Below are positions 42,487 to 57,916 of a DNA stretch of 64,000 nucleotides, piece after piece. The stretch covers positions 124,001 through 188,000 of the IMG/VR virus record IMGVR_UViG_3300037010_003311; one strand, given 5' to 3'. The notes under the pieces are model-generated. The model saw only the letters and a list, made by a program, of their open reading frames with translations. It made no database searches and was not told the origin of the DNA. The position numbers and the translations under genes were made by a program. How positions within the stretch are numbered: position 1 is the first letter of the stretch; each line of letters opens with the position of its first letter.

Positions 42487-42506
42487 ATTAAAATATGCAA
42501 TTCAAG

Positions 42507-42618: not shown

Positions 42619-42693
42619 ACTATTTGTTATCACTATTTAAAATACCAAGCAAGTGCAACTTAGGTCTTATTTTGTGTAGGAACTATTTAAACA

Positions 42694-42773
42694 TGGCTGG
42701 GGAATGTAGGATTCAAACCTACAATCTCTATATTGTAAATATAGAGCTCTAATCATTTGGAGTAAATTTTCCC
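42694..42773 (-). pseudogene. Degenerate tRNA-Val(TAC)-like element
   Basis: Intact anticodon stem CTATA-TTTACAA-TATAG and T stem GTAGG/CCTAC, but T loop TTTGAAT and mispaired acceptor and D stems. Confidence 0.65.
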
Positions 42774-42778
42774 ATTAT

Positions 42779-42854
42779 TGGATCGGAGTGGAGGGTTCGA
42801 ACCTCCGACACGCAGCGCCAAAAGCTGCTGTTCTACCAACTGAACTAACTCCGA
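42779..42854 (-). tRNA. tRNA-Gln(TTG)
   Basis: TCGGAGT TA GTTC..GAAC A GCAGC TT TTG GC GCTGC..GGAGG TTCGAAC CCTCC ACTCCGA T CCA; U1-A72 pair. Confidence 0.93.
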
Positions 42855-43045: not shown

Positions 43046-44050
43046 TTAACGAGTTTGATAATTTACCATATCCGAAATGAGTTCATCTAACTTTTTATTA
43101 TATTTCGATATAGTTAATGGAATAAACATATTTTTAAGCATCCGTTTATTAATCTCTTCTTTGTAAACTTTAGTGTACTTAATCATATCTAAGTTCGAAT
43201 ATAAATCTTCTTTTTTACAAATTTTTATAATTTTACTAAGAACCTCTGTTAAATAATTATCACAAATATTTTGATCAGTTACTGTAAAACCAATATTAAA
43301 AATTAAGTTTTCTCGGTTTTTTGAACACTCAATAATTTTTAATAATTCCGGTTTAACATATTTTGATTCTATATTTGTGAACACTCTACGGATTTTTGGA
43401 TTTATAATACACGGTTTATTATTGATAACATTATGAATTAAAGTTGGTAATACCATCCCTGATTCTGGCTCATGGCCTATTCCAGTAATATTAAAAAATC
43501 TTACTATTTGTACATTAGGCAATTCTCTAAATAAGAACTCGGATACTAATTTTTGGCTCGCGTAGCCACCACGTTTGCTCAAAAGCGGGTTACTTATAGA
43601 TATTGGGGAATTATCAATTATATCCCCATTCTCTCCAAATACTTCGCTACTACTAGCAAACACTAATGGTATTTTACTCTTTTCAATAAAGTTATACACT
43701 TTAAGATTAATAGTTAACGCATCAGCAATTGTATTTTGATTAAGAATATTATTAACTCCAACTGGACTAGCAAGATGTATACAACAATCAAAAAAATGTT
43801 TCTTAAACTTAGGAAGTTTCTCTTTTACTAAATCTATATTATAACGAATAAGATTTTTATCATTGTAGTTATCTAAAAGGCGGCTACGACCATAATGCGT
43901 AATAACCTTAGGTTCATCCCCACCAATCATATAATTATATTCTTTATCAATTATATGAACTCTATAATTAAGATCTAATAGCCATTTAGTTATATGACTT
44001 CCAATAAAACCAGCTCCTCCAATAATTAAAATATTTTTCTTTTTTTTCAT
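43046..44050 (-). CDS. NAD-dependent nucleotide-sugar epimerase/dehydratase (extended SDR)
   Basis: GGAGFIG, HLASPVG, ASSSEVFG, YASQK, RFFN. Confidence 0.9.
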   Translation of the reverse strand: MKKKKNILIIGGAGFIGSHITKWLLDLNYRVHIIDKEYNYMIGGDEPKVITHYGRSRLLDNYNDKNLIRYNIDLVKEKLPKFKKHFFDCCIHLASPVGVNNILNQNTIADALTINLKVYNFIEKSKIPLVFASSSEVFGENGDIIDNSPISISNPLLSKRGGYASQKLVSEFLFRELPNVQIVRFFNITGIGHEPESGMVLPTLIHNVINNKPCIINPKIRRVFTNIESKYVKPELLKIIECSKNRENLIFNIGFTVTDQNICDNYLTEVLSKIIKICKKEDLYSNLDMIKYTKVYKEEINKRMLKNMFIPLTISKYNKKLDELISDMVNYQTR

Positions 44051-44129
44051 TATTAGTCCTTGGTATTAATTGAATTTATCTATATATTTCTATAATAGGT
44101 TAAATCGTTGATATCCGAACTATCAGTAA

Positions 44130-44918
44130 TTAGAACCAACCCAATGCTAACATAGTTTCTAATTCTACAATTGAATAAGATTGTAGGTTATCATACCTAT
44201 AAATACTTTTTTTAGAAATCAAATTATTTAAAAACATTTTAGTTACTTGGCAAGTTTGTTTAATAAAGTTTTCCTTATTAATAATGAAATTTACAATTTG
44301 ATCTTTGTCACCAACAAAACTACCATTCTTTAATTGAAATATTAAACCTTTATTTCTTGTACTATCATATACACGTGGAATATTTAAAATAAGATATTCT
44401 TTGATATTAGAACGAATATATCTTTCCATTGCTAATTTAAATACCGCATAATTATTAAATTCTTCTATATCAACCGTTGGTGCACTAAAACCTAGATTAT
44501 TAATCTTTACTGGTATCTCCTGGAATGTAGCCATACTACTAGCAAATATTAGCTTACATTTTAATGCTTTAGCAAGTTGTACGATATTAATAGTACCATC
44601 AATCATGGTTTGGCTAGTTTTAACTTCATTTTGGAAATCAAACTTATCACTAGGGCTTGCAAAATGAATAATGCAATCAACATTTTTAAATGACCGGTAC
44701 ATACTAACGATTTTCGAATCGCGTATATCTGAATCAATATAAATAATTTTATCAAATCGTTTAGTAAGTTCTGGCTTTAGTAATCCAATAAGATAACCTT
44801 TGCCACCAGTTATTAACGCTGTACCCATTATCCGTTTATTAATTTTCTTTTGTTCATCTTCAAATATAAATGTATTGGTGTTTACTATTTTGATATCATT
44901 TTGTTTCTTGGAGTTCAC
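44130..44918 (-). CDS. Second SDR nucleotide-sugar epimerase/reductase
   Basis: ITGGKGYLIG, IHFAS, FASS, YAVFK; true start may be ATG 44828. Confidence 0.8.
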   Translation of the reverse strand: MNSKKQNDIKIVNTNTFIFEDEQKKINKRIMGTALITGGKGYLIGLLKPELTKRFDKIIYIDSDIRDSKIVSMYRSFKNVDCIIHFASPSDKFDFQNEVKTSQTMIDGTINIVQLAKALKCKLIFASSMATFQEIPVKINNLGFSAPTVDIEEFNNYAVFKLAMERYIRSNIKEYLILNIPRVYDSTRNKGLIFQLKNGSFVGDKDQIVNFIINKENFIKQTCQVTKMFLNNLISKKSIYRYDNLQSYSIVELETMLALGWF

Positions 44919-45369
44919 TATCTTTTCCTAATCTTATATAAAATATTCCATTTGGATAACTATTTATTTCGGCTAAATTATTTTTAAACTCATATAATGT
45001 TTCTGGATCATAAAAAGGAATATCCAGCATCTTCATTATTTCGTAATCATCATCTAATTGATGACCAATACCAAATTTTTCATAACCATACTTACCAGCA
45101 TTACAAATTATAATTTTACCGAAGTGTGATCCAAAGTGTTTACAACTAAATTTTAACTGTTCGAGCCTATGAATAATAAATCCGGCAACACCATAAATGT
45201 AAACGGTGTTACCTTCCGAAGCAATACCAGCTGCTACATTAACTAAATTGCTTTCACCAAGATTACAATTTATAATTTTAGCTTTAGATGGAAATCGTTC
45301 GGTATTCCACATATCTGCATGCAGTAGGTAATCAGTATCTTTTAAACTATCAGCAAAGGTCATGCGCAT
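44896..45369 (-). CDS. Transketolase-like pyrimidine-binding subunit (short)
   Basis: NCNLGESNLVNVAAGIASEG, F..HRLEQLK, G.GH, YIRLG. Confidence 0.85.
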   Translation of the reverse strand: MRMTFADSLKDTDYLLHADMWNTERFPSKAKIINCNLGESNLVNVAAGIASEGNTVYIYGVAGFIIHRLEQLKFSCKHFGSHFGKIIICNAGKYGYEKFGIGHQLDDDYEIMKMLDIPFYDPETLYEFKNNLAEINSYPNGIFYIRLGKDSELQETK

Positions 45370-45423
45370 AATAATTCCTTTTTAAGGCAAATATACGATT
45401 TCTATGTTCGATATAATTTATCA

Positions 45424-46173
45424 TCATTTAATAAACCTTTCCAGAAACTTCATCTTTTTTAATTTATCGCTAATGGTAAGTCCATTAAGATGTTTTAAAC
45501 TTTCTAGATTTTTATAGTGCCATTTAACCGAATCAATTTCCATCTCTAGTACTCCATCACCCTTTATCGTATGAATAAAGATAACCACTGGTTTTACTTT
45601 CAGTTCCTGACAATTGGATACTTTTTTAAATTGCTCATCAAAGCTTCGTACCAAATTTATTTTTGGATTAATATATATATCCCAGACCTCCCAATCATTT
45701 ATTTCAAACAATTGTATGTATGAGGAATGTAACTTATTGTCAGCGAGAGGGCCAGTTAATTGCATTTTATTAAAATCTATAGTTACTACCATTTGTAATT
45801 GGTTTTGGCCAATGAACTGGATCGCTTCATATGTAGGCCCCATCTGTAAAGCGGCATCGCTAATATTAACCCATGTTGGTTTATCGGATACTAGACTAAT
45901 TCCAGCCGCTACCCCTAAAGCGTTACCAAGAGTCTCTTCGCTGAAATTTACAAATGGTAACTCTTTATGCTTAATACCATAAGAATATTCAGAAATTGGT
46001 TTAATTGTGGTATCTAACCAACCATTCTTTTCCCAAGTATAATAATAAGCTTCTGCCCCAAACGGTTTACCAATTACTATATTCCAATCTTTAGTTACTA
46101 ACCCATTACTAAATATATAATCTAAATAGTATAATTGTGAAAGAGCACTAGGTATATGCATATTATAACCCAA
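45424..46173 (-). CDS. Transketolase-like TPP-binding subunit
   Basis: HIPSALS, TLGNALGVAAG, SDAALQMG..YEA...DFNKMQ, HTIKGDGV, WHY. Confidence 0.85.
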   Translation of the reverse strand: MGYNMHIPSALSQLYYLDYIFSNGLVTKDWNIVIGKPFGAEAYYYTWEKNGWLDTTIKPISEYSYGIKHKELPFVNFSEETLGNALGVAAGISLVSDKPTWVNISDAALQMGPTYEAIQFIGQNQLQMVVTIDFNKMQLTGPLADNKLHSSYIQLFEINDWEVWDIYINPKINLVRSFDEQFKKVSNCQELKVKPVVIFIHTIKGDGVLEMEIDSVKWHYKNLESLKHLNGLTISDKLKKMKFLERFIK

Positions 46174-47026
46174 ACAATGATTTTAAATCTTCTGTTATGG
46201 AATACCCAATTGAATACTCCATCGGTGTATATTCATTTAAAATTTTTATTAACTTAGTATCTATTTCTCTATTAAAGACTGGAGCGATTAATTTATATGA
46301 ATCATTCATACCAAATAATTTGCAGTTAAATATTTCATAATTTAACCGAATCATAATTCTTTTATGATTAAACAGTTTTAATTTATTATTTTGATCGGTC
46401 GTGTCTAATATACAACTATTTTCGTAAATATTTGGGAAATAGCTAAAAATATTATTTTTTGTATATAATGGAAATTCATAAAATCTTTTATATAAATCAA
46501 TTATTAAATCAATATCATTTTTAAGTAGTGGCTCAAAAGGTTTCCAAATAGAACCAGATAAAGCACTGGTTCTATAATATGGTCTCGGCCCATCTTTTAT
46601 TTCAAAATCATTAACGGTAGGATTCGTTTTCGAAAGTACTTTAACCGCTTCAATATACTCACTAAAACTTGGAATATATGGTTCATTACTAGTAGCAGCT
46701 GCAATTAAAGCTTCATGACAATTAATCATCTGCTTTAAATCAATACTACACTCAATTTCCAAATCTTTAAGTAACTTATTACTAATTTTAAAATTTTCAA
46801 TTATTTCAGGTGTAATATTTGCTGCATTATAGAAGTTATTATTATAATGATCTTCTAAACTAGCAAGAGATTTATAATAATAAGTAAAGTTAATATCGCG
46901 GAATACAAACCCCGCCGAGTCATCTATAAATATTATAGGATTAAGAGCCGTTGCTGCATCATCAGCGTACAGCTCATTAATGTATTTCGTTTCCGCCTCA
47001 ATTATGGCTTGCCTCGATTCGTTCAT
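46163..47026 (-). CDS. Hypothetical protein in tailoring cluster
   Basis: Likely start 47026 (AAGGGGG RBS); overlaps the downstream gene. Confidence 0.65.
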   Translation of the reverse strand: MNESRQAIIEAETKYINELYADDAATALNPIIFIDDSAGFVFRDINFTYYYKSLASLEDHYNNNFYNAANITPEIIENFKISNKLLKDLEIECSIDLKQMINCHEALIAAATSNEPYIPSFSEYIEAVKVLSKTNPTVNDFEIKDGPRPYYRTSALSGSIWKPFEPLLKNDIDLIIDLYKRFYEFPLYTKNNIFSYFPNIYENSCILDTTDQNNKLKLFNHKRIMIRLNYEIFNCKLFGMNDSYKLIAPVFNREIDTKLIKILNEYTPMEYSIGYSITEDLKSLFGL

Positions 47027-47067
47027 GGTTTCCCCCTTTAAATAGATTTGAATCACAGTTAAGCGAA

Positions 47068-48042
47068 TCAATAATTACATATACTAAATGTTAATAATTC
47101 GGAATCCGAAACATTTGAATTATCTATTTTTATTTCAGAAAGAATAGTTTCAATCTCTTTTATTTTAATAGTTTTTGTTTCGTTTTCGTAATGTATTTCT
47201 ACTTCATCTTTATTTATAAAAAATGATGCTGATGGGTTATAGTTCAACGAGGTTTTATCTAATTTCGAAGTATTGTACATATCAAATATTTTTTCTATAT
47301 CGGAAAACTTATCGATAATAGGTTCCCGGCCATAATTAAGAAATTTAAAATTATCTCGAACAAAGTCGAAGCATTCTTTATAGCTTTTAATAAATGTTAT
47401 AGTTTTATATATTTTGAACTTATTTAATACACTTGCTTCAGTAATATTAAATGGTTCAAAGATTCTATAATCGAACCCAATATTAATATAGATATTCTCT
47501 AAATTAAGAGTTTTTAAATACTCTAAAAATCCTAAATACTTTTTAGGATCTTCTGTAACAACTAAATTCAAATTAACATAACCATAATATTTATATGTTG
47601 TTATAATATTTTGAATTATAAATTTTAGTGACCATCTTGGTCCGTTTGTACGTTCTGGGTCCTCGATATGTGGACTAATAACCATATCAACATTCTCTAT
47701 TTTATAGAGCTCTTTAATTATAGTATTAAACTTTTTTATCGGTATTTCACCATTAGTGAAAACATAACCTTTATAATTTTCAATGACTTGTTGCTTATAT
47801 CGCATTAGCTCAATAAAATATGGAGCTAATAATAGTTCACCACCAGCTTCCATAAATATTTTACCTTGCTTTGGCATTACATGATTAAAGTATGGTACTA
47901 TATCGAAGTTTCCAGAATGGTTTTCGGTTATTGTATTATTTAGAAAATTATAACAGAAGTCACATTTTAAATTACATTCGGTGTACCACTCGACACATAT
48001 AATAATATCATCTGGATCAATACTGATTCGGTGGGAACTCAT
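47068..48042 (-). CDS. Radical SAM protein
   Basis: CNLKCDFC, GGE, FTNG. Confidence 0.9.
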   Translation of the reverse strand: MSSHRISIDPDDIIICVEWYTECNLKCDFCYNFLNNTITENHSGNFDIVPYFNHVMPKQGKIFMEAGGELLLAPYFIELMRYKQQVIENYKGYVFTNGEIPIKKFNTIIKELYKIENVDMVISPHIEDPERTNGPRWSLKFIIQNIITTYKYYGYVNLNLVVTEDPKKYLGFLEYLKTLNLENIYINIGFDYRIFEPFNITEASVLNKFKIYKTITFIKSYKECFDFVRDNFKFLNYGREPIIDKFSDIEKIFDMYNTSKLDKTSLNYNPSASFFINKDEVEIHYENETKTIKIKEIETILSEIKIDNSNVSDSELLTFSICNY

Positions 48043-48626
48043 TAATAATCCTTAATTATAAACATCGGGTACTTAGGAGCTTTCATTTGGAAAGCATAAT
48101 CAACTAAAAATTTTTTTTCATCTTCGAAATTATTAAGAAATGGTTTTTGTACAAAAATATAATTATTAAAAATTAAAAAGGTATCTATCAATGGTACAAT
48201 CCCAGTAGTTAAAACATGATCGAATAGTAGATCGGCAAACTTAATACCACAATATTGTTTAATAATCAAATTATCTTTATTTGGATAGTTCTTTATAAAC
48301 TCTATAATATCTTGATCAGGTAAAGCGTTAGGATTTATTATGTTAGTATAATTATTATTAATTTTATAGAAAAAGTTTTTATCCTGGATGCGTGGGGTAA
48401 ATACTTCTAATTTAGTATGATCGCTTGCAACCTTAAAGCCATAATGTTCGTGAGCAAGAAGTGTACTAACTACATCAGACTGCTTGAAATCAAGAATCTT
48501 TTCTATAAGTGGTTCATAAAAGCCATAATCATCTAAAAATTCTTGAATCTTTCTAGTTTTAATATATTTAATTTTTTCTTCATTGCTAAAAATTTCATCA
48601 CCTTTTATTTGAATAATATTTCCCAT
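48042..48626 (-). CDS. Hypothetical protein in tailoring cluster
   Basis: Likely start 48626 (GAGG RBS); TAATG coupling to the next gene. Confidence 0.65.
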   Translation of the reverse strand: MGNIIQIKGDEIFSNEEKIKYIKTRKIQEFLDDYGFYEPLIEKILDFKQSDVVSTLLAHEHYGFKVASDHTKLEVFTPRIQDKNFFYKINNNYTNIINPNALPDQDIIEFIKNYPNKDNLIIKQYCGIKFADLLFDHVLTTGIVPLIDTFLIFNNYIFVQKPFLNNFEDEKKFLVDYAFQMKAPKYPMFIIKDY

Positions 48627-48636
48627 ATTAATACCT

Positions 48637-49485
48637 CTAATTTTCCCAAAACTCATTATCAAAATAACAAAAATTATTATGACATTGAGATATTATATAT
48701 TCGTTACCACTAAAATTAAATTCCGAAAGTTTGATGCCAGTTTTATTAGTAAATATATCATTAAAACATTTATATACTACATTATCCTGAATAAATAAAA
48801 CGAAATTTTTAATATGGCACCGTTTATTAAAACTAGAGGTATTATTTTTCCATATTTCATAATTACTTAATTTATTAAACCGATGCGGTATAAATGCCCA
48901 ATCATTTTTTAAATACTTAAAATTTTTATCTTGTTCCAAAGAAACTAAATGTTTACTACTTGGACTAGCATCAAGTTTTTTTGGTAATAATGGATAGTAT
49001 TGAACTTTGTCTTTATAAATCAATTTTAACTTTTTATATAATTCGATATTTGACCGAGGTAGATCCATTATGGAGATTTCGTTAAGATTTGAACTAAATG
49101 TATTAATTGTTTTTAGTAGTTCAATAAATTTAGTTTCAGTATAATGAAAAGAGTAATTTAATTTTATATCAGGGTATGATGCTACGGCTGCTTCGACTAC
49201 CGCGGGGTTAGAACCATTAGTCTGCAAAATTATAGAACCAAAGTAACTTTTAGCTAATAGTATTAAATCTATAAGTTCTGGGTGCAAAGTAGGTTCGCCT
49301 CCAAATATAAATAAAATATTATTATCAATACCTGATTCTTTAACCCTAAGTTTATCGAAAAAATTTTTTAGATTCAAGAAATCTATTTTTGTATAGTCTA
49401 TAGATGATTCAAGCGATTTATGCATATCCTCACAATACGGACAATTGTAATTACAACTTTCAATTAATCGGTACTCTATTTTCAT
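48637..49485 (-). CDS. Radical SAM protein with C-terminal Cys cluster
   Basis: CNYNCPYC, GGEPTLHP, QTNGS; C...C...CHNNFC. Confidence 0.92.
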   Translation of the reverse strand: MKIEYRLIESCNYNCPYCEDMHKSLESSIDYTKIDFLNLKNFFDKLRVKESGIDNNILFIFGGEPTLHPELIDLILLAKSYFGSIILQTNGSNPAVVEAAVASYPDIKLNYSFHYTETKFIELLKTINTFSSNLNEISIMDLPRSNIELYKKLKLIYKDKVQYYPLLPKKLDASPSSKHLVSLEQDKNFKYLKNDWAFIPHRFNKLSNYEIWKNNTSSFNKRCHIKNFVLFIQDNVVYKCFNDIFTNKTGIKLSEFNFSGNEYIISQCHNNFCYFDNEFWEN

Positions 49486-51377: not shown

Positions 51378-51999
51378 CTTTATTATGCTCCGGAAAACTT
51401 ATATTATCTAAACCATCACATGTTTGGATAAACATTTGTTTTTTTATTAAGGTTATTTTGCCATCCGAGCCATCCACGGATTGTTTAAGTATTTGAAAAA
51501 GTTTCCAATCATTATCTAGGTGATTATTTAATAACTCAGATGGAAAACTAGGTAATAATTCTTTTTTAAAAATAATTTGCGAAAGTTGGAATAAATCATT
51601 TGTAGTTTCTATTTTAAAATTATTTCTATAAGTTAGTTGTAGTAACCGATCTTCTAATTTAGCCGGTTTGTAATTCATATAAATTAATGAAGAATCTAAA
51701 ACTAAATGTTCAACAAAAGATGATGATAAATAATCATCGTCTTCTAAAAAGTAAATGTATTCACCACTAGCTAAATCAAATAAATGTTTATATAAATAAC
51801 CTAAATTATTATTACTATAATATGAATATCTAATCGGGTAAGAATCGGAGTATATTTCCTGAATATCTTTACTATCGTTATTAACGAGAACTTCTATATT
51901 AAATGAAAATTTAAACTGTAAAATACTATTAATACACCGTTCAAATAACTTTGGTCGGTTATGAGTTAAAATCAATATGCTCAATTTGGGGATAGACAT
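51340..51999 (-). CDS. GT2 (GT-A) glycosyltransferase
   Basis: ILILTHNRP, VNND, GEYIYFLEDDD. Confidence 0.9.
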   Translation of the reverse strand: MSIPKLSILILTHNRPKLFERCINSILQFKFSFNIEVLVNNDSKDIQEIYSDSYPIRYSYYSNNNLGYLYKHLFDLASGEYIYFLEDDDYLSSSFVEHLVLDSSLIYMNYKPAKLEDRLLQLTYRNNFKIETTNDLFQLSQIIFKKELLPSFPSELLNNHLDNDWKLFQILKQSVDGSDGKITLIKKQMFIQTCDGLDNISFPEHNKDERFLNNTTVKN

Positions 52000-53014
52000 C
52001 TTGCTTTCCTTTTAATTGTTTTTCTATACCATCACATTCTTTAAACCATTTACATTTCATACACTCTTTTGGCTTATAATAAGTGTATTCTCTAGATCGT
52101 TTTGCTGCATTCCATCCTAATTCTAAAGACTCGGACCAAGTATATTGTTTATTATTATCAAATTTATAATCTCCATTATAAACTTCTTTATTCCAATCAG
52201 TTGTATCAAATACGTGCTGAAACTGACCATAAACTAAATCTGTAAATTCCCCAGCAAAGCAAAAGGGCAAATACCGAATACGAATATCAAATTCTGGATA
52301 ACTAACTTTAAGCTGGCGTATAGTATTCAAAACTGGAACACTAAGCTCTTCGTATTTAATTATGTTGGATTTTGCATTATCATCCCAATAATTATGAAAT
52401 ATGAAATTTACTTGTTTTAATCCAAACTTGATAAAATGGTATATTACTTGTAAAAAACTATTATCTATACAATTACGGTTACTAGTTGTAATAGTGCAGT
52501 TAATACGGGTTATAATACCATTAGATAATGAATTGGTAATAGCTTTAACTAAGTTTTTATAAGCTCCTGGTTTACCAACTATTTCATCATGATAATGATC
52601 GGTACCATGCATACTGAATAAAATCTCTTTTAATCCATAATCTTTAGACTTAAGAAGGAAATCAAGATCTTTAAATTTTTGACCATGACTAAGAGTACTA
52701 ACATGATCAAATCCTTCGTTACAATATTTTAAAATCCTAAACCAGTCTGGGTGAATACTACTTTCTCCACCACTAAGTTCGATTTCTTTAATAAGGCTAT
52801 AACTGCTAATATAATCAATACGGTCTTTAATAATTTTAAAATTATCCATCTTATCTAAACGATCTTTATAATAACAGAATGTACAATTCAGATTACAAAG
52901 AGTTCCGGTATCCAATTTTGCTCGCTTACAAAGAGGGTTAGTTTGTTCGGACCATAATGGATTAATTTCTGGCGTAGCAATTAAATTATAATTCATTTTA
53001 TCCCTTTTTTCCAT
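51959..53014 (-). CDS. Radical SAM protein, HxsC-like C-terminus
   Basis: CNLNCTFC, SGGE, YLPFC, K.KECMKCKWFKECDG. Confidence 0.9.
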   Translation of the reverse strand: MEKRDKMNYNLIATPEINPLWSEQTNPLCKRAKLDTGTLCNLNCTFCYYKDRLDKMDNFKIIKDRIDYISSYSLIKEIELSGGESSIHPDWFRILKYCNEGFDHVSTLSHGQKFKDLDFLLKSKDYGLKEILFSMHGTDHYHDEIVGKPGAYKNLVKAITNSLSNGIITRINCTITTSNRNCIDNSFLQVIYHFIKFGLKQVNFIFHNYWDDNAKSNIIKYEELSVPVLNTIRQLKVSYPEFDIRIRYLPFCFAGEFTDLVYGQFQHVFDTTDWNKEVYNGDYKFDNNKQYTWSESLELGWNAAKRSREYTYYKPKECMKCKWFKECDGIEKQLKGKQDVYPQIEHIDFNS

Positions 53015-53079
53015 TAATAATACCTTTGTGTAGATAATTGATTTTTCTCTTAAAGATAGTAGTTACTCTACACAATTCG

Positions 53080-54066
53080 TTATTTTTTACCAAGAATTTG
53101 TCTTATCGTTTCGATAATTATATCCGAATCATCCAAATATAAGCTATCGAAATTATTTTCTATATCCCATTTTCTAACCATCAGACCAGTGTCGATTTTT
53201 AAATAATCTTCGTCAATATCATTATCGTAAATTACTGGAATACCAAAATATTTACATTCCGCAATCATACGAGGACTACAATCCCATTTACGATCTATTG
53301 GTGTATAGATATATGCTGACATAATTTCAAAAATATTATGGATTGGTACTACTCTATAGCAAACTTGTTTATCAATAATAGGATTATCAAGTAAAGGGCT
53401 CTCTTTATTAATAAGAATAAGTAAGCGTTCGTGGTTATTCAAATTAGATAAATGTTTTTTAATAGTACAATTATCGATCAGTTTACAATTACTCGTAGCA
53501 TATAATATTACATTCTTTGGTAATTGACTTTCCATATGATTAAAGCTATCAGTTTTTAATATTGGATTTAAAGCATTAAAGTTTAATTTTTTAACATAAT
53601 TAAGTTTCTTTGCATTGAGTGGTAATTTATAATTTAATCGTTCATCCACCATAAATAATATTTTATCAATTAAGTTATTATACAACTGGAACTTGGAGTA
53701 ATCTCTAGTCCCACATGGAAATAAAATCAAACCTTTTACATTATATATATTTACCTCATTAAGTAAACCATCGGTAAAAATTAGAATGGAGTTAGGACAA
53801 TTATAAATTCTTGGCCTACTAAATTTAATTTTTAAATCTTTTACTAAATTTGGATCATACTTAGATAATGCTATTTCCATTTCTTCTTTACTAATATCCT
53901 CACCAAAAACTATTTCAACTTTATAATATTTATTTAGTAAGATATAATATTCGATTACTTCAAAAAAATGGCCACAAATTCCATGTTTATTATCATGACT
54001 ACTATAAGTAAGTATTACTTCTGCATCCGAAGTAAAAGCCAATTGCTTTTTAATTTTATTTTCCAT
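53080..54066 (-). CDS. Putative GT-B glycosyltransferase-like protein
   Basis: DCSPRMIAECKYFGIPVI resembles the GT-B E-x7-E-A...G.PV motif; paralog of 57074-57916. Confidence 0.5.
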   Translation of the reverse strand: MENKIKKQLAFTSDAEVILTYSSHDNKHGICGHFFEVIEYYILLNKYYKVEIVFGEDISKEEMEIALSKYDPNLVKDLKIKFSRPRIYNCPNSILIFTDGLLNEVNIYNVKGLILFPCGTRDYSKFQLYNNLIDKILFMVDERLNYKLPLNAKKLNYVKKLNFNALNPILKTDSFNHMESQLPKNVILYATSNCKLIDNCTIKKHLSNLNNHERLLILINKESPLLDNPIIDKQVCYRVVPIHNIFEIMSAYIYTPIDRKWDCSPRMIAECKYFGIPVIYDNDIDEDYLKIDTGLMVRKWDIENNFDSLYLDDSDIIIETIRQILGKK

Positions 54067-54874
54067 TATTATTCCAGTTTTGTTTACATATATTAAAGTT
54101 TTTTAAACTATTAATTGTTGGCTGAAATTGATTAGAACTAAATGAGGTACATGTTTTGCATATATCTGGAGTGATACCATCTTTAAAATCTTTAAATAAT
54201 TTATATCGTTTACCATCTAAATAAAGATCTTTAAAATTGGTTTTATAAATATTTCCAAGTATAGCATCTTTAGTGAGATCGGTTGGTTCTCCGGAACAAG
54301 TGCAATAATTGAAATCACCATTTGATAAAATTCGTGGTACCCATAGATTTGAACACACTCCAGTTATTTTTGGAACATTTATTCGGGATTGAGTTTCACA
54401 ATCATAATCATAAAATCTGTTCCGATTACTTAATTCGATATTGATACCATATTGTTTTGCAAGTTGAATATTTTCTTCAATCTTATAAAAAAATTTATCC
54501 TTAGCTCTTGTCTGGTATTTAAATTCTTCTATCCCATCGCATCCATAATGAGAAACATGAATTTTTAATTTTTTTAAATTAATACCATTCGTAGTTAACT
54601 TATCGAAATTTATTTTAGAAAAATTTGTATGAAATTCAATTGTTTTAAGATTTGAATTGGTGAATAATTTTAGAATTTCATATATATCTGGGTGCAAAAA
54701 TATTTCACCTCGACTTGGAGTTAATTTTAAATATGTTATTTTTAGTTCATTGATATCTTTAATTAAAGTTTTGATTGTGTCGAGGTTAATTATTTCTAAT
54801 GGTTCTTTTGTATTACCCGCCCCACAAAAATAGCACTTAAAATTACACTGATTAATGATCTCAATTGCCAACAT
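54056..54874 (-). CDS. Radical SAM protein with SPASM/twitch-like domain
   Basis: CNFKCYFC; CSNLW...NGDFNYC...LGNI...CKTC. Confidence 0.92.
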   Translation of the reverse strand: MLAIEIINQCNFKCYFCGAGNTKEPLEIINLDTIKTLIKDINELKITYLKLTPSRGEIFLHPDIYEILKLFTNSNLKTIEFHTNFSKINFDKLTTNGINLKKLKIHVSHYGCDGIEEFKYQTRAKDKFFYKIEENIQLAKQYGINIELSNRNRFYDYDCETQSRINVPKITGVCSNLWVPRILSNGDFNYCTCSGEPTDLTKDAILGNIYKTNFKDLYLDGKRYKLFKDFKDGITPDICKTCTSFSSNQFQPTINSLKNFNICKQNWNNNGK

Positions 54875-55226
54875 CTATAAGACCTTTTCGATTATCAGAA
54901 GCTATGGTTTTACACACTCGATAATCAAGTCGTTTAATCTTTCTGTAAACGTTAGGGTAATCCATTTTCAGATTATCTAAATAAATTTTAAAACAATCAA
55001 GTTCGAATTCAATCTCGGAAAAGTATTCAGTGGTTTGATTAAAAAAGAGTTTCGTGGCTGGATCAGCAACCGTTTCAATACCTACCTCAAAGTTTTTACT
55101 TCGGCCACATAACATGTAGTTATATGTGGCTAGTTGTGGTATAGTATTAGCTATATTAACAGACCGTAGATTATTGGAATTTAACTGAGATGATTCTTTA
55201 TCACATTCGTATTTTGGATCTGGCAT
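54861..55226 (-). CDS. Hypothetical protein
   Basis: 121 aa; AAGGA RBS; overlaps the next gene. Confidence 0.65.
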   Translation of the reverse strand: MPDPKYECDKESSQLNSNNLRSVNIANTIPQLATYNYMLCGRSKNFEVGIETVADPATKLFFNQTTEYFSEIEFELDCFKIYLDNLKMDYPNVYRKIKRLDYRVCKTIASDNRKGLIDVGN

Positions 55227-55239
55227 TAATCTAATCCTT

Positions 55240-56766
55240 TTAACTTTTTAATATATATATTTGTCTACCACGAGTAATAGCAACATATATTAATCGTAGC
55301 ACTGTATCTAAATCTTTACGTAAGAATGCAATAAGTTCATCACCATTAATGAAAACGTGGTCATACGTGCTCCCTTGTAGCTTATGGAAAGTATTAGCAA
55401 ATACTGGTCTAACGAAAGCGTATTTCTTTTTGAAATCATAGAACTTTGCCCAAGCATCCCGTCTTTTGCTACCAACTTCTTTAGATGCTATATCAGCAAG
55501 TTGTTTTAGTTTCTCTTGGTACTTCTTAACATATTTTGAATCTAGAATATTAAATGTTAAACCATCTTCGTCGGTACAGTACCAATACTCATACTGTTTA
55601 TCGAATGTTTGCTTATGTTTAATTTCAGCTATAGTAACTATATCTCCATTATTGTATTGGATACCACCATTTTTATCATATGGTTTTAAAAAGATAATTT
55701 TTTCACCAGGGATATATTCTGGAATAATACCATCTGGATAATCATTAATGTTATTCATATATCTAATATAAGTATTATACTCTTGTACTAGTCTATTAGT
55801 ATAGCATCCAATAATTTTATCTTCGGTCTCTATTTCAAAGTACCTTTTCATAAACTGTCCAGCATCGGAAAAGCATTCTATATCTGGTTTAGGAGTAGTC
55901 ATGAATTCCATCAATTTAGATATGTTGTATTGCTCATTATCATTGATGCATTCAATAAGCCATAAAGCAAAATGGGTAATACTCGAATCTTCTTTTTGTC
56001 GTACAACTTGCTTAAGTTCATATCTATTTACTAATGGGTTTCGTTTATTAAAAATAAAATTCATTTGGCCATTTACTGGCTTAATTTGATAACTGTCCCC
56101 AATAAAGATAATCTGTTTCCTGACACGGTTAGAAAGCAGTTCAAATAGCATCATAGCCATATCATGATTAATCATACTAGACTCATCCACAATTAGATAA
56201 TCGCAATAAATAATGTCTGCTCTAAGGTCTACTTCATTATTTACAAATATTTCGTTACCATCGTCGTCTATAGCGTGTTTTAAACCAAGAAACGAATGTA
56301 ACGTTTTAAAATATAAGCGTCTACTCATTTCGAGGTCAAAATCGTCCATTTCAAGCTGACGTTGAATCATATTCTTAATGACTTTTAAAGCCTGGTGTGT
56401 TGGAGTGATAATTGCTATAGTTGGATAACTTTCGCTTTCATAAAGTCGTTCGACCACATTACTAGTAATTGTACTTTTACCGGTCCCGGCAAAACCTTCA
56501 ATACTAATAACTTGTTCGGTTTTATCTTTATTTTCTAAAATATTAGTAGTGACGTATTCTTGGATCTCATTTAGATCAATTTCTAATTTTTTAGGTTTAA
56601 CTTTCTTTGGTTTTGGGGCTATATCCCACCCACCCAAATAAAACTCTTCTTCTACTATAGGGACCGTAGGCATTTGTGGTGGATTTGGTGCAGTCGTTAC
56701 TTCAACTGCTTCTTGTGCCCCAATTACTTCACCCTCTAACTCGGTATCTAATATTATTGATTTCAT
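55240..56766 (-). CDS. dda: Dda/RecD-like SF1B DNA helicase
   Basis: GFAGTGKST, TPTH, IVDESSM, IGDSYQIKPV, RQ, TFHKLQGSTYD, YVAITR; likely start 56766 (GAGGAG RBS). Confidence 0.9.
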   Translation of the reverse strand: MKSIILDTELEGEVIGAQEAVEVTTAPNPPQMPTVPIVEEEFYLGGWDIAPKPKKVKPKKLEIDLNEIQEYVTTNILENKDKTEQVISIEGFAGTGKSTITSNVVERLYESESYPTIAIITPTHQALKVIKNMIQRQLEMDDFDLEMSRRLYFKTLHSFLGLKHAIDDDGNEIFVNNEVDLRADIIYCDYLIVDESSMINHDMAMMLFELLSNRVRKQIIFIGDSYQIKPVNGQMNFIFNKRNPLVNRYELKQVVRQKEDSSITHFALWLIECINDNEQYNISKLMEFMTTPKPDIECFSDAGQFMKRYFEIETEDKIIGCYTNRLVQEYNTYIRYMNNINDYPDGIIPEYIPGEKIIFLKPYDKNGGIQYNNGDIVTIAEIKHKQTFDKQYEYWYCTDEDGLTFNILDSKYVKKYQEKLKQLADIASKEVGSKRRDAWAKFYDFKKKYAFVRPVFANTFHKLQGSTYDHVFINGDELIAFLRKDLDTVLRLIYVAITRGRQIYILKS

Positions 56767-56814
56767 TTTTACTCCTCTATTTTCTTTAACCTTTATTTTT
56801 AACGCGTGAGAAAT

Positions 56815-56838
56815 ATAGCGGTGGTTTCCCACCGCTAT
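56815..56838. terminator. GC-rich hairpin upstream of helicase
   Basis: ATAGCGGTGG-tttc-CCACCGCTAT (GAAA loop on the minus strand). Confidence 0.45.
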
Positions 56839-57073
56839 TTTAAACCTTTTGATTTTGCCAGAATATAATCATCGATTATGGTTGATTGATTATATATACC
56901 ATTTGTATTTCTAGAAGCATTTGAACCACGCTCCATCATAAAGACCGAGACCATTCTCACTTTTGATAAAATATATTTTAACATTGTTGGTGAATCCTTT
57001 TCTTTTAAGAATTACAAGTTGCTTATATATTTCTATTATTACTATTTAATAGTTTTAGACCGATGCATGATTG

Positions 57074-57916
57074 TTAATCATTTAAAAAATCTTTTATAAG
57101 AATATCATTTTCCGTTAGCCAATATTCATTTAAATCGTTGGATGTGTACCTATCATAAATACTATCATTTTTATATTCATCTTTCACAAATATAACGTTC
57201 AAATTTTTTTTATAGAATTTAGCTTCCGGGATCAATCTATTATTAGTATCTAGCGCACCATTATGAACATAAAGAATATTATTAACCGTATCATATATAT
57301 TTAAATTTTGAGTATGTGTCTTAAAAATATAATCGGGTGGTAAAAATGCTCGTATATCGTTAACGGTTGATGACAAGCTAGAAACATAGGTTTTATTATT
57401 TTTTATATCGGATTGTAGTTCTTTAAATATATCGAATTTTAATTTAAGACGAGTTCGTTTAAAAAATTTCTGATAATCATAATAACCATATATAGTAGTG
57501 ATTGGATAGGGAATACCCAATTTCATATCTTTAGTATTATTACAATAAAGATATTTAATACCATTTGGGTTGAGCCAATAAATTTCATTATAGCTTTTTA
57601 CATCAAGAAATAATACTTTATCCAATTTCAAAGAATAACAATCAAGTCTAGAAATAAATTTAATATTATCTAGCACTTGTTCTATGATTTCCGGTTTATA
57701 TTTATTATTATAAAGTGTAAGAACTTTTTCTTTGATTTTAGTATCATTTGGATCGCAAACTATATAAAAATTTATCGTCGCATCATTATTTTTGCCAATA
57801 ATTTGGAATAATTGGTAAAAATATTCAAATGTATAAAGTAAGGTGCCATTAATTTGATTATATTTTTGCCAATAATAAACCACTCCATATTTTATCTTTG
57901 AATCAGATACTAACAT
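57074..57916 (-). CDS. Putative GT-B glycosyltransferase-like protein (paralog of 53080-54066)
   Basis: INGTLLYTFEY ~ ICGHFFEVIEY; DTNNRLIPEAKFY ~ DCSPRMIAECKYF; likely start 57916. Confidence 0.5.
   Translation of the reverse strand: MLVSDSKIKYGVVYYWQKYNQINGTLLYTFEYFYQLFQIIGKNNDATINFYIVCDPNDTKIKEKVLTLYNNKYKPEIIEQVLDNIKFISRLDCYSLKLDKVLFLDVKSYNEIYWLNPNGIKYLYCNNTKDMKLGIPYPITTIYGYYDYQKFFKRTRLKLKFDIFKELQSDIKNNKTYVSSLSSTVNDIRAFLPPDYIFKTHTQNLNIYDTVNNILYVHNGALDTNNRLIPEAKFYKKNLNVIFVKDEYKNDSIYDRYTSNDLNEYWLTENDILIKDFLND

What the first reader, a model, noticed from the sequence alone, without database searches (positions are those of the whole stretch)
43046..57916. Phage-encoded ~15 kb tailoring cluster: six more radical SAM enzymes, glycosyltransferases, split transketolase and two SDRs
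Seen: tightly overlapping genes for 6 CxxxCxxC proteins, 1 GT2, 2 GT-B-like proteins, two transketolase subunits and two extended SDRs, contiguous with the SPASM operon (8 radical SAM genes in ~16 kb). Known: SDR + TPP-dependent ketol transferase + reductase sets build branched or higher-carbon NDP-sugars, and large Campylobacter myoviruses carry multiple radical SAM genes of unknown role. Inference: the locus makes an unusual sugar and attaches or tailors it on virion proteins (possibly the Cys-rich fibre), DNA or the host surface. It also suggests a low-oxygen host.
Basis: partly seen in the sequence, partly recalled or inferred. Interest (0 to 1): 0.8.

Follow-up and report, generated by a model that had tools for sequence, protein, structure and literature searches.

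The report
Fibre-linked radical-SAM and sugar gene cassette
The gene cluster is real, and it is the sugar-and-radical-enzyme half of a conserved, uncharacterised cassette that always travels with a short cysteine-repeat fibre protein, in large phages and in predatory bacteria, so it most likely decorates that fibre.

Summary
On the minus strand of 43046-58000 lie six radical SAM genes, one GT2, two GT-B-fold proteins, a minimal two-piece transketolase-like TPP enzyme and two extended SDRs, mostly overlapping.

The cluster is not a one-off. The same gene order, at 25-75% protein identity, recurs in about ten metagenomic viral or phage-like contigs. It also sits in the chromosomes of predatory bacteria (Halobacteriovorax, Peredibacter, a Bdellovibrionales MAG), flanked there by housekeeping genes. 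Its members lie dispersed in Campylobacter Firehammervirus phages.

Where the neighbouring DNA is covered, it is nearly always joined to two SPASM maturases and a short fibre. The fibre tip is a Cys/Asn repeat ending CxC[N/H]Y, exactly at the S74 chaperone cleavage site.

Best reading (about 0.45): a fibre-maturation cassette. The soluble enzymes build an unusual NDP-sugar, and together with the radical SAM enzymes they modify the fibre.

DNA modification and host-surface remodelling are disfavoured. The low-oxygen inference does not follow from the radical SAM count. No chemistry has been shown.

The parts
43046..44050 (-). SDR1: extended SDR, NDP-sugar epimerase/dehydratase/decarboxylase type (GGAGFIG, SSSE, YASQK)
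   Evidence: PF01370 5.4e-22. Nearest solved structures are NAD-dependent epimerase/dehydratases and UDP-glucuronate decarboxylase. Homologs at the same end of the cassette in L005, L006, L007, L017, L018.
44130..44918 (-). SDR2: short extended SDR, probable NDP-4-keto-sugar reductase
   Evidence: PF01370 and RmlD_sub_bind. Best solved match is a dTDP-4-dehydrorhamnose reductase, E 1.9e-6. YxxxK is present.
44896..45369 (-). Pyr-domain subunit of a minimal transketolase-like TPP enzyme (157 aa, no transketolase C-terminal domain)
   Evidence: phrog_23258 1.9e-23. Best PDB match is the C-terminal chain of split transketolase 6yaj, residues 73-194 only. The catalytic Glu (E39) is invariant in 7 homologs. 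45% identical to CP220 gp141.
45424..46173 (-). PP-domain subunit of the same TPP enzyme (249 aa)
   Evidence: PF00456 26.9 bits against a cut-off of 22. Best PDB match is the N-terminal chain of split transketolase 6yak. H6, D106 and N135 are invariant in 13 homologs. More than 400 short homologs exist in metagenomes.
46163..47071 (-). Orphan ORF, 302 aa, unknown function
   Evidence: No Pfam, NCBIfam or PHROG hit. The 5.8-billion-protein search returned only itself. No homolog in sister loci.
47068..48042 (-). Divergent radical SAM protein, no auxiliary-cluster cysteines
   Evidence: CNLKCDFC plus GGE. Weak NCBIfam radical SAM hits only. No Pfam hit.
48042..48662 (-). Orphan ORF, 206 aa, unknown function
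   Evidence: No family hit and no homolog in sister loci.
48637..49485 (-). Radical SAM protein with four C-terminal cysteines
   Evidence: PF04055 35.5 bits. CNYNCPYC plus GGE. Cysteine positions.
49460..50596 (-). Radical SAM protein ('rSAM378') with a Cys-rich C-terminus; conserved cassette member
   Evidence: PF04055 34.4 bits. phrog_13987. 37-50% identical homologs at the same position in L005, L006, L007, L010, L014, L017.
50535..51377 (-). Radical SAM protein, sub-threshold, no auxiliary-cluster cysteines
   Evidence: CNFSCSYC plus GGE. PF04055 17.4 bits, below the cut-off. phrog_1802 7.5e-11.
51340..51999 (-). GT2 (GT-A fold) glycosyltransferase, 219 aa, soluble, with an EDDD motif
   Evidence: PF00535 1.6e-11. 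Homologs 39-47% identical at the same position in 8 loci. No hydrophobic segment.
51959..53014 (-). Radical SAM protein ('rSAM351') with a twitch-like C-terminal CxxCx5C-DG motif; universal core member
   Evidence: PF04055 49.9 bits. Full-length weak match to HxsC4. 284 homologs. Invariant C252, C318, C321, C327. Present in every cassette locus. 39% identical to Firehammervirus radical SAM proteins.
53080..54066 (-). GT-B-fold protein 'GTB-a'; universal core member, always next to rSAM351
   Evidence: phrog_24441. AlphaFold model pLDDT 84.9, pTM 0.87. All listed Foldseek PDB hits are GT-B-fold enzymes, mostly glycosyltransferases, best E 3e-5. Homolog of CP220 gp184, which is adjacent to radical SAM gp183.
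54056..54874 (-). Radical SAM/SPASM protein ('rSAM272')
   Evidence: PF04055 37 bits and SPASM PF13186 23.6 bits. 61% identical in L009, 33-44% in L012 and L017.
54861..55226 (-). Small ORF, 121 aa, unknown; specific to this window
   Evidence: No family hit and no homolog in relatives.
55240..56832 (-). SF1 (RecD/Pif1-like) helicase; an insertion, probably not part of the pathway
   Evidence: AAA_19, AAA_30, UvrD_C_2. Absent from all 12 sister loci. Present in all four DNA runs, with no joint skipping it.
57074..58000 (-). GT-B-like protein 'GTB-b' (the likely start is the codon at 57916)
   Evidence: No family hit. The Atlas model (pTM 0.79) has TM 0.65-0.70 to GT1/GT4 clusters. Homologs in 8 of 12 loci, directly upstream of GTB-a in 6 of them.
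57903..58640 (-). Conserved cassette protein (beta domain plus helical hairpin), function unknown; always follows the fibre gene
   Evidence: phrog_25260. Homologs in 10 of 12 loci. Model pLDDT 83. No PDB fold match. Only uncharacterised phage proteins in BFVD. Weak tail-fibre-assembly leads in the Atlas.
58522..59868 (-). DUF7487 homing-endonuclease-like gene; a selfish insertion between the fibre gene and the rest
   Evidence: PF24308. Paralogs at 11121-12686 and 22294-24790 hit homing-endonuclease PHROGs. Absent from relatives.
59871..60773 (-). Short fibre with a Cys/Asn hexad-repeat tip ending CNY, directly before the S74 chaperone domain: the proposed substrate
   Evidence: Peptidase_S74. 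Sequence and tip motif compared across loci.
60773..62083 (-). Radical SAM/SPASM maturase 1
   Evidence: Full-length weak match to PapB-type ranthipeptide maturases. Conserved in 10 of 12 loci.
62080..62382 (-). Small acidic Cys-free protein between the two maturases (possible helper)
   Evidence: No Pfam hit. No cysteine. An ORF of 76-109 aa lies at the same position in L009, L012, L013 and L018.
62384..63526 (-). Radical SAM/SPASM maturase 2
   Evidence: Weak matches to PapB and CXXX-repeat peptide maturases. Conserved in 9 of 12 loci.
38101..38769 (-). PIG-L family de-N-acetylase, a detached member of the sugar set
   Evidence: PF02585 1.8e-13. Homolog of the PIG-L gene that ends the cassette in L005, L006, L007, L032 and lies inside it in L015, L018.
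42411..42854 (-). Three tRNA genes (Ala, Val, Gln) marking the downstream edge of the contiguous cluster
   Evidence: ARAGORN. Rfam.

Best explanation
The 15-kb stretch is the variable, distal half of a conserved cassette of about 20 kb. The cassette's fixed partner is a short trimeric fibre whose tip is a Cys/Asn repeat.

Proposed working:
1. The fibre (59871-60773) folds with its C-terminal S74 chaperone. The chaperone then cuts itself off and leaves ...CxCNY as the free tip.
2. The two SPASM radical SAM enzymes, and probably some of the six further radical SAM enzymes, modify that tip, for example with thioether cross-links.
3. In parallel, soluble enzymes build an unusual nucleotide sugar. 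SDR1 makes a keto-sugar. The minimal TPP enzyme (PP plus Pyr subunits) adds or moves a two-carbon unit. SDR2 reduces the keto group. PIG-L removes an N-acetyl group.
4. The GT2 and the two GT-B-fold proteins attach the sugar to the fibre.

The outcome would be a chemically elaborated fibre tip used for adhesion or receptor binding, differing between lineages because the sugar end of the cassette is swapped.

Shown here: the enzyme families, the conserved catalytic residues, the conserved gene order and the conserved fibre partner.

Inferred: that the fibre is the substrate, the order of steps, and every chemical detail.
For: 1. Conserved gene order. The order is SPASM2, small ORF, SPASM1, fibre, 57903-like, GTB-b, GTB-a, rSAM351, further radical SAM genes and GT2, TK-PP, TK-Pyr, SDRs, PIG-L. 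It recurs at 25-75% identity in L004-L007, L009-L014 and L032.

2. Cellular copies. The same block sits in the chromosomes of Halobacteriovorax (next to shikimate genes) and Peredibacter. In Peredibacter it spans about 19 kb between cytochrome bc genes and a tRNA, an rRNA operon and ftsK. No phage morphogenesis gene lies in the flanks examined. The cassette's common denominator is therefore the fibre, not a virion or phage DNA.

3. The fibre tip. It is conserved as (CxCNxx)n or (CTCNCNY)n and ends CxC[N/H]Y. It is followed either by the S74 motif SDxRLK or directly by a stop codon.

4. Campylobacter phage CP220. Its gp140 carries the CTCDCNY repeat and lies next to the TK-Pyr homolog gp141, near a SPASM1 homolog.

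5. Solubility. All cluster proteins lack hydrophobic segments.

6. Fold evidence. GTB-a has a GT-B fold, and protein-glycosylating enzymes (SPY, OGT, NGT) are among its matches.

7. Catalytic residues. The TPP and SDR catalytic residues are conserved.

8. Variable sugar end. DegT, PIG-L, halogenase, 2OG oxygenase and SDR genes come and go between lineages while the core stays fixed. That pattern fits a diversifying surface decoration.
Against: - No direct evidence exists that the fibre is modified at all. No mass spectrometry, expression data or RNA run was available.
- Conserved gene order shows functional coupling, not a substrate relationship.
- The Foldseek matches of GTB-a mix protein-acting and small-molecule glycosyltransferases, with modest TM scores of 0.35-0.49.
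- In Firehammervirus phages the members are scattered over the genome, some among DNA-metabolism genes.
- L012 and L013 have ten or more radical SAM genes but few sugar genes. The radical SAM set and the sugar set may therefore be separable functions.
- The fibre has no signal peptide, so how the bacterial copies would reach the cell surface is unexplained.
- Three ORFs in the window are orphans.
Confidence: 0.45

Rival explanations
1. Host-envelope remodelling. The cluster makes a nucleotide sugar and transfers it to the infected cell's LPS or capsule, to block superinfection or alter recognition. This has been suggested for glycosyltransferases in the host-recognition region of pelagimyophages.
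For: The pelagimyophage paper places glycosyltransferases and radical SAM cassettes inside the tail-fibre 'host recognition cluster' and proposes O-chain modification (PMC7029224). SDR, DegT, PIG-L and UDP-glucose-dehydrogenase-like genes are typical of surface-polysaccharide loci.
Against: No protein in the cluster has a membrane-spanning segment, and nothing resembling a flippase, polymerase or polyprenyl-phosphate glycosyltransferase was detected. This reading does not explain the strict linkage to the Cys-repeat fibre and its SPASM maturases. Nor does it explain six to eleven radical SAM genes.
Confidence: 0.12
2. A free product. The cassette is a biosynthetic gene cluster for a released molecule, either a heavily modified glycosylated peptide cut from the fibre-like precursor (a giant RiPP) or an aminoglycoside-like sugar compound. 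The product would act as a toxin, signal or metal binder.
For: The SPASM enzymes best match PapB, CXXX-repeat and QhpD-type peptide maturases. rSAM351 best matches HxsC4. Relatives carry a halogenase and a 2OG oxygenase, as many RiPP and antibiotic clusters do. PIG-L, DegT and twitch-type radical SAM enzymes also occur in aminoglycoside pathways (own knowledge). Authors of a cyanophage genome called similar genes 'antibiotic synthesis genes' (PMC12801897).
Against: The precursor is a 160-330 aa protein that usually carries an S74 trimerisation chaperone, the hallmark of fibres and spikes. No protease, exporter or immunity gene was seen in any locus. In phages the cassette lies among tail-fibre and other structural genes.
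Confidence: 0.15
3. DNA hypermodification. The sugar and radical SAM enzymes modify phage DNA bases to evade restriction.
For: Phage glycosyltransferases and radical SAM enzymes do take part in DNA base modification (own knowledge). In CP20 the rSAM351 homolog lies among thymidine kinase, ThyX and ribonucleotide reductase genes.
Against: The cassette occurs as a chromosomal island in predatory bacteria with no phage replication or packaging genes in the flanks examined. No DNA-acting transferase, base hydroxymethylase or DpdA-type enzyme is in the cluster. The modification cited for CP220 DNA is complete replacement of G by a 7-deazaguanine derivative (PMC10516641). I saw no sugar adduct reported.
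Confidence: 0.04
4. No common product. The stretch is a mosaic of independently acquired auxiliary genes that merely accumulate in a plastic region of the genome.
For: The region contains obvious insertions: a helicase, a homing-endonuclease-like gene and three orphan ORFs. Members are dispersed in Firehammervirus genomes. It has the lowest G+C in the window.
Against: Colinearity is kept across relatives sharing only 25-50% identity, and across the boundary between phages and cells. The two halves of one TPP enzyme and the GTB-a/rSAM351 pair are always retained together.
Confidence: 0.08

Closest known systems
Radical SAM gene sets of Campylobacter group II phages (Firehammervirus: CP220, CPt10, CP20, CP21)
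   Same: Direct homologs: rSAM351 39-41%, GTB-a 26-28% next to a radical SAM gene, TK-Pyr 42-46%, TK-PP about 30%. Also shared: a UDP-glucose-dehydrogenase-like gene followed by radical SAM, small ORF, radical SAM, a PIG-L homolog and a Cys-heptad repeat protein (gp140). CP220 has 11 radical SAM genes and CPt10 has 12, of unknown role (PMC2853527).
   Different: In those phages the genes are scattered over about 150 kb instead of forming one operon-like block. Overall nucleotide similarity is nil.
Radical SAM/SPASM thioether maturation of Cys-rich peptides and proteins (ranthipeptides/PapB, sactipeptides, QhpD acting on the QhpC subunit)
   Same: A Cys-repeat substrate is encoded next to SPASM radical SAM enzymes. 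The best NCBIfam matches are PapB, CXXX-repeat and quinohemoprotein maturases. Precedents for Cys-Asp/Glu thioethers and for protein-sized substrates: PMC9413430 and PMC13692751.
   Different: All scores are far below family cut-offs (55 against 340 bits). The substrate is a trimeric fibre with an S74 chaperone, not a leader-core peptide. The acceptor residues would be Asn, not Asp or Glu. Up to eleven radical SAM enzymes are present rather than one or two.
TPP-dependent two-carbon branching of NDP-keto-sugars (YerE in yersiniose; E1-like AviB1/AviB2 in avilamycin) flanked by SDR dehydratase and reductase (own knowledge)
   Same: A split PP plus Pyr thiamine enzyme is encoded between an epimerase/dehydratase-type SDR and an RmlD-like reductase. 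The cofactor-binding Asp/Asn and the catalytic Glu are conserved.
   Different: The enzyme is of the transketolase/DXS lineage, not the acetolactate-synthase or E1 lineage. It is cut down to 249 + 157 aa with no C-terminal domain. In most relatives a flavin-halogenase-like gene sits between the two halves. Neither substrate nor product is known.
Protein glycosylation islands for surface filaments and virions (Campylobacter flagellin glycosylation, glycocin S-glycosylation by SunS, mycobacteriophage and Mimivirus virion glycosylation) (own knowledge)
   Same: Sugar-nucleotide tailoring genes (SDR, DegT, deacetylase) and soluble glycosyltransferases are encoded beside the structural protein they would decorate. 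The sugar genes vary between lineages.
   Different: No homology to Maf/PseB-I was seen, and only a weak hit to SunS. The many radical SAM genes have no counterpart in those systems.
Mosaic adhesive trimer fibres of Bdellovibrio (PMC10769870) and phage fibres with S74 intramolecular chaperones
   Same: Predatory bacteria carry phage-like trimeric fibre genes with S74 domains. Here Halobacteriovorax and Peredibacter carry the whole cassette.
   Different: The fibre here is short (160-330 aa) with a Cys/Asn repeat tip and a dedicated enzyme set. In my limited search I saw no such enzymes linked to MAT fibres.
Host recognition cluster of pelagimyophages (PMC7029224)
   Same: A hypervariable region with tail fibres, glycosyltransferases and 'radical SAM cassettes' in large aquatic myophages. 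MAG contigs with the same cassette were found here (L014, L032).
   Different: That paper only notes the genes in passing. It does not link them to a Cys-repeat fibre or to bacterial copies.

Membership tests
Radical SAM superfamily (PF04055) | CxxxCxxC cluster-binding motif near the N-terminus | tested here: met
   All six ORFs have it.
Radical SAM superfamily (PF04055) | Score above the Pfam gathering threshold (29.5 bits) | tested here: inconclusive
   Met by 48637-49485, 49460-50596, 51959-53014 and 54056-54874. 50535-51377 scores 17.4 bits. 47068-48042 has no Pfam hit.
Radical SAM superfamily (PF04055) | GGE-type SAM-binding motif after the cluster motif | tested here: met
   GGE in five and RGE in 54056-54874, 45-50 residues downstream.
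SPASM/twitch radical SAM subfamily | C-terminal Cys motif for auxiliary Fe-S cluster(s) | tested here: inconclusive
   54056-54874 passes PF13186. rSAM351 has invariant C252, C318, C321, C327. 49460-50596 and 48637-49485 have C-terminal Cys groups. 47068-48042 and 50535-51377 have none.
Transketolase (split-chain type) | PP domain with a Mg-TPP binding motif (GDG...N) | tested here: met
   PF00456 above its cut-off. The motif reads SDA...DFN, with D106 and N135 invariant in 13 homologs.
Transketolase (split-chain type) | Pyr domain with the cofactor-activating Glu | tested here: met
   E39 is invariant. It aligns to residues 73-194 of 6yaj, but only at E 0.043. Pfam Transket_pyr gave no hit here, and a 'weak' hit for the L010 homolog.
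Transketolase (split-chain type) | C-terminal transketolase domain after the Pyr domain | tested here: not met
   The Pyr subunit is 157 aa and ends where the Pyr domain ends. All homologs are 153-159 aa. It should therefore be called a transketolase-like minimal TPP enzyme, not a transketolase.
Transketolase (split-chain type) | Ketol transfer between sugar phosphates | not testable with these tools
   Needs an enzyme assay.
Extended SDR (NDP-sugar epimerase/dehydratase) | Rossmann GxxGxxG, catalytic Ser/Thr and YxxxK | tested here: met
   SDR1 has GGAGFIG, SSSE and YASQK. SDR2 has GGKGYLIG, ASSM and YAVFK (read). PF01370 is above its cut-off for both.
GT2 glycosyltransferase (GT-A fold) | PF00535 above its cut-off and a DxD motif | tested here: met
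   44.9 bits against a cut-off of 23.3. EDDD motif in the sequence.
GT-B glycosyltransferase | Two Rossmann-like domains (GT-B fold) | tested here: met
   GTB-a model pLDDT 85. All listed Foldseek PDB hits are GT-B-fold enzymes, mostly glycosyltransferases, probability 0.97-1.0. For GTB-b the Atlas model has TM 0.65-0.70 to GT1/GT4 clusters.
GT-B glycosyltransferase | Sequence membership of a CAZy or Pfam GT family, and transferase activity | tested here: not met
   No Pfam or NCBIfam hit for either protein. Activity is untested.
RiPP (ranthipeptide/sactipeptide) gene cluster | Short precursor with a leader and Cys-rich core, plus a SPASM maturase above its family threshold | tested here: not met
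   A Cys-rich core and SPASM enzymes are present. But the substrate is a 160-330 aa fibre that usually carries an S74 domain, and the maturase scores are far below their cut-offs.
Surface-polysaccharide (O-antigen/capsule) locus | Membrane machinery: initiating phosphoglycosyltransferase, flippase, polymerase or ABC exporter | tested here: not met
   No such Pfam family was found, and no hydrophobic segment (maximum Kyte-Doolittle 19-residue mean 1.49).
Phage DNA hypermodification module | A DNA- or nucleotide-acting enzyme in the cluster (DpdA/TGT, dNMP hydroxymethylase, DNA glycosyltransferase, HMUDK) | tested here: not met
   None was found by Pfam, NCBIfam or PHROGs in 43-58 kb. The rest of the 227-kb genome was not examined.

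The most novel reading that the evidence does not exclude
A mobile cassette shared by large myophages and predatory bacteria turns the tip of a trimeric fibre into a protein-scale natural product. A Cys/Asn repeat is exposed by self-cleavage of the S74 chaperone. Up to a dozen radical SAM enzymes then rewrite it, and it is capped with a lineage-specific branched sugar. The result would be the adhesive or receptor-binding end with which the predator, viral or cellular, recognises its prey.
Probability: 0.3. Interest if true: 0.9.

Novelty: new variant of a known kind. Interest (0 to 1): 0.72.

Why it matters
Since 2010 the dozen radical SAM genes of Campylobacter phages have had no explanation. 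Similar 'radical SAM cassettes' have only been noted in passing in marine phage genomes.

This analysis ties them to one definable object: a short fibre with a Cys/Asn repeat tip, its two SPASM maturases, three glycosyltransferases and a swappable sugar-tailoring set. The same object exists in cultured Campylobacter phages and in cultured predatory bacteria.

That makes the question testable by mass spectrometry on available organisms.

If the fibre is indeed the substrate, this would be enzymatic post-translational chemistry of the RiPP and glycan kind applied to a receptor-binding protein. It would be a new route to host-range diversity and a source of unexplored radical SAM and thiamine enzymes.

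Tried and rejected
- Nucleotide search of the 15 kb against 50,697 phage records found nothing.
- The major capsid protein finds only remote Staphylococcus jumbo-phage hits, so the phage has no close cultured relative.
- Sigma-70 promoter and terminator scans were at chance level. The T4 late-promoter motif TATAAATA was not enriched, 29 found against 29.3 expected. Expression timing could therefore not be inferred.
- Rfam found only tRNAs and no riboswitch.
- No RNA run holding the locus was listed, so transcription is untested.
- Laying DNA contigs on the locus showed its presence and strain variation, but no form lacking the helicase.
- The orphan 46163-47071 has no relative among 5.8 billion proteins.
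- The conserved 57903-like protein gave a good model but no PDB fold match. BFVD returned only uncharacterised phage proteins. I therefore dropped the 'tail fibre assembly protein' label, which rested on weak Atlas scores of 0.55.
- Profile search of rSAM351 against solved structures matched only the generic radical SAM core, so its substrate cannot be read from homology.
It was rerun without that row.
- I considered reading SDR1 as a UDP-glucuronate decarboxylase, from the SSSE motif and the UXS hits. I did not commit, because epimerases score equally.

Full report
**1. The observation**

The window comes from a 226.7-kb IMG/VR contig. It is a myovirus-type phage with a terminase, tail sheath and major head protein, and it has no close cultured relative.

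Between 43046 and 58000 every gene is on the minus strand, and most neighbours overlap by 1-62 nt.

- Two extended SDRs.
- The PP half of a transketolase-like enzyme.
- A GT2.
- Radical SAM domains.

All six radical SAM candidates have CxxxCxxC followed by GGE or RGE. Together with the two SPASM enzymes further upstream, they are the only eight such frames among the 58 long open frames in the window, and all lie in 47-63.7 kb.

The two 'GT-B-like' proteins have no sequence-family hit, but the fold evidence agrees:
- 53080-54066 gave an AlphaFold model with pLDDT 85 and pTM 0.87. All its listed PDB neighbours are GT-B-fold enzymes, mostly glycosyltransferases.
- The Atlas model of 57074-58000 aligns to GT1/GT4 clusters at TM 0.65-0.70.

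**2. Corrections to the anatomy**

The 'split transketolase' is a minimal enzyme:
- It has a 249-aa PP subunit and a 157-aa Pyr subunit.
- Both best match the split transketolase of Carboxydothermus (6yak/6yaj).
- The Pyr subunit stops where the transketolase C-terminal domain would begin.
- The metal- and cofactor-binding Asp and Asn and the activating Glu are invariant across the family. An active TPP enzyme is therefore likely.

SDR1 scores equally with UDP-glucuronate decarboxylases, epimerases and dehydratases. SDR2 best matches an RmlD-type 4-ketoreductase.

Three ORFs have no relatives anywhere: 46163-47071, 48042-48662 and 54861-55226.

An SF1 helicase (55240-56832) and a homing-endonuclease-like gene (58522-59868) are insertions absent from all relatives. 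The latter has two paralogs elsewhere in the window.

Three tRNA genes close the contiguous block. A PIG-L deacetylase that ends the cluster in relatives sits 4 kb further on, at 38101-38769.

No protein in the cluster has a hydrophobic segment of transmembrane strength.

**3. Relatives and synteny**

For environmental relatives the answer is clearly no.

The order runs as follows: SPASM radical SAM, small ORF, SPASM radical SAM, fibre, a conserved 200-aa protein, GTB-b, GTB-a, rSAM351, further radical SAM genes with the GT2 among them, TK-PP, TK-Pyr, SDRs, PIG-L. A truncated UDP-glucose-dehydrogenase-like gene often comes first.

This order recurs at 25-75% protein identity in:
- four IMG/VR contigs;
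- a 152-kb NCBI metagenome contig that is the closest relative;
- several further long contigs;
- two contigs binned into MAGs.

The matrix gives these counts for the twelve loci:

| Member | Loci holding it |
|---|---|
| rSAM351 and GTB-a | 12 of 12 |
| The 200-aa protein | 10 of 12 |
| SPASM1 | 10 of 12 |
| SPASM2 | 9 of 12 |
| Fibre | 9 of 12 by similarity, plus L010 by its repeat motif |

The sugar end varies. SDRs, a DegT aminotransferase, PIG-L, a 2OG-Fe(II) oxygenase and a tryptophan-halogenase-family flavoprotein appear in some lineages. The halogenase gene sits between the two TPP subunits, and this window lacks it.

Some relatives carry ten or eleven radical SAM genes in a row.

The families are large. 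There are 284 hits for rSAM351 and 411 for the short PP subunit.

**4. The constant partner: a Cys-repeat fibre**

The fibre proteins share little except their C-terminus. The tip comes in two forms:
- A hexad form, as in this window: C-D-Q-D-C-K-C-N-V-V-C-S-C-N-G-N-C-G-C-N-Y.
- A heptad form, (CTCNCNY) repeated four or more times.

Both end CxC[N/H]Y. This is followed either by the S74 chaperone motif SDxRLK or directly by a stop codon.

From established knowledge of S74 intramolecular chaperones, the domain cleaves itself off at that serine after trimer folding. The mature fibre would then end in the Cys/Asn repeat.

The two adjacent SPASM enzymes best match PapB-type, CXXX-repeat and quinohemoprotein thioether maturases, far below family thresholds. 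The small ORF between them has no cysteine, so it is a helper rather than a precursor.

**5. Copies in cells**

A scan of one genome per species with the rSAM351 profile found the whole block in Halobacteriovorax (two genomes), Peredibacter (a complete chromosome) and a Bdellovibrionales MAG.

- In Halobacteriovorax it follows chorismate synthase and an AroB-AroA fusion.
- In Peredibacter it spans about 19 kb between cytochrome bc genes and a tRNA, an rRNA operon and ftsK. It holds two S74 proteins, DegT, PIG-L, an SDR and eight radical SAM genes. No capsid, terminase or tail genes lie in the flanks examined.

More distant lone homologs of rSAM351 occur in DPANN archaea, CPR bacteria and others.

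What travels together, in viruses and in cells, is therefore fibre plus enzymes.

**6. Campylobacter phages**

Among 50,697 cultured phage records, Firehammervirus phages hold nearly all the homologs. The one exception is a TK-PP hit in an uncultured 'Bacteriophage sp.' record. The shared members are:
- rSAM351 (39-41%);
- GTB-a, next to a radical SAM gene;
- TK-Pyr (42-46%) and TK-PP (about 30%);
- a UDP-glucose-dehydrogenase-like gene followed by radical SAM, small ORF, radical SAM;
- a PIG-L homolog and an SDR.

CP220 gp140, directly beside the TK-Pyr homolog, carries seven CTCDCNY repeats.

All members are nevertheless retained.

The original genome paper counted 11-12 radical SAM genes and could not explain them (PMC2853527).

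**7. Mechanism**

I commit to a fibre-maturation cassette at about 0.45.
- Radical SAM enzymes act on the Cys/Asn tip.
- SDR1, the TPP enzyme, SDR2 and PIG-L make an unusual nucleotide sugar.
- The GT2 and the two GT-B proteins attach it to the fibre.

Shown: families, catalytic residues, solubility, gene order and the fibre partner.

Inferred: the substrate, the order of steps and the chemistry.

Loci rich in radical SAM genes but poor in sugar genes lean toward the peptide.

**8. Rivals**

- Host-envelope remodelling was proposed for pelagimyophage glycosyltransferases (PMC7029224). It lacks any membrane machinery here and does not explain the fibre linkage.
- A released glycosylated peptide or sugar compound is possible. 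But the precursor is a chaperone-bearing fibre, and no exporter, protease or immunity gene was seen.
- DNA modification is unlikely, given the bacterial chromosomal copies and the absence of DNA-acting enzymes in the cluster. The modification cited for CP220 DNA is a 7-deazaguanine (PMC10516641).
- A random mosaic of auxiliary genes is contradicted by colinearity at 25-50% identity.

**9. Oxygen**

The runs that hold this DNA are microbial mat, sediment and vent metagenomes. A low-oxygen habitat is therefore plausible.

The radical SAM count is not evidence for it. Sister cassettes carry predicted O2-dependent oxygenase and halogenase genes. They also occur in genera I know to be aerobic predators.

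**10. Novelty**

The enzymes belong to known superfamilies. The assembly does not match any described system that I found in the literature searches. That assembly is a Cys-repeat S74 fibre, two SPASM maturases, three glycosyltransferases, many further radical SAM enzymes and a swappable sugar set, shared by phages and predatory bacteria.

I rate it a new variant of known kinds (protein glycosylation island plus RiPP-like maturation), with a real chance of being something more.

Noticed in passing
window 41328-42065 (-): A protein with a Tad2-like domain (PF11195, 5.6e-28), the Thoeris anti-defence family, just downstream of the tRNA genes.
   Followed up: no
window 40021-40626 (-): A 201-aa GGDEF-domain protein (PF00990, 1.6e-19) in a phage genome. 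It could make or mimic a cyclic nucleotide signal.
   Followed up: no
window 58522-59868, 11121-12686, 22294-24790 (-): Three paralogous homing-endonuclease-like genes (DUF7487; PHROGs 3339 and 559), one of them wedged between the fibre gene and the rest of the cassette. Contig depth rises over 58.5-58.9 kb, consistent with a multi-copy element.
   Followed up: partly
L005 14898-16139; also L006, L007, L010, L011: In most relatives a tryptophan-halogenase-family flavoprotein (PF04820, 2.8e-64) is encoded between, and overlapping, the two halves of the TPP enzyme. The window lacks it and has a 54-nt gap there.
   Followed up: partly
L065 24206-24574 (CP220) and L066 7654-8124 (CP20): Campylobacter phages encode small proteins made almost entirely of CxxC triplet repeats. 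The CP20 one lies two genes upstream of the rSAM351 homolog. They may be further radical SAM substrates.
   Followed up: no
L007 2185-4782: Four tandem paralogous fibre genes, each ending in the (CTCNCNY)4 tip followed by the S74 cleavage motif.
   Followed up: no
window 53788-54022: A dense patch of strain differences in two of the four metagenomes, at the junction of the GTB-a and rSAM272 genes. The rest of the 6 kb examined is nearly invariant in the source sample.
   Followed up: no
window 27710-31717 and 32263-38007 (-): Two giant ORFs (1335 and 1914 aa) with no PHROG hit lie directly downstream of the PIG-L gene. They may be large fibre or structural proteins belonging to the same host-recognition region.
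   Followed up: no
window 46000-54000: The lowest G+C of the window (26.5-27.6%, against 29-40% elsewhere) coincides with the run of radical SAM genes.
   Followed up: no
L022, L024, L029, L030, L038, L052 and others: Lone homologs of rSAM351 (26-34% identity) occur in DPANN archaea, CPR bacteria, Brocadiaceae and Nitrospirota without the rest of the cassette. Some loci hold two or three paralogs side by side.
   Followed up: no
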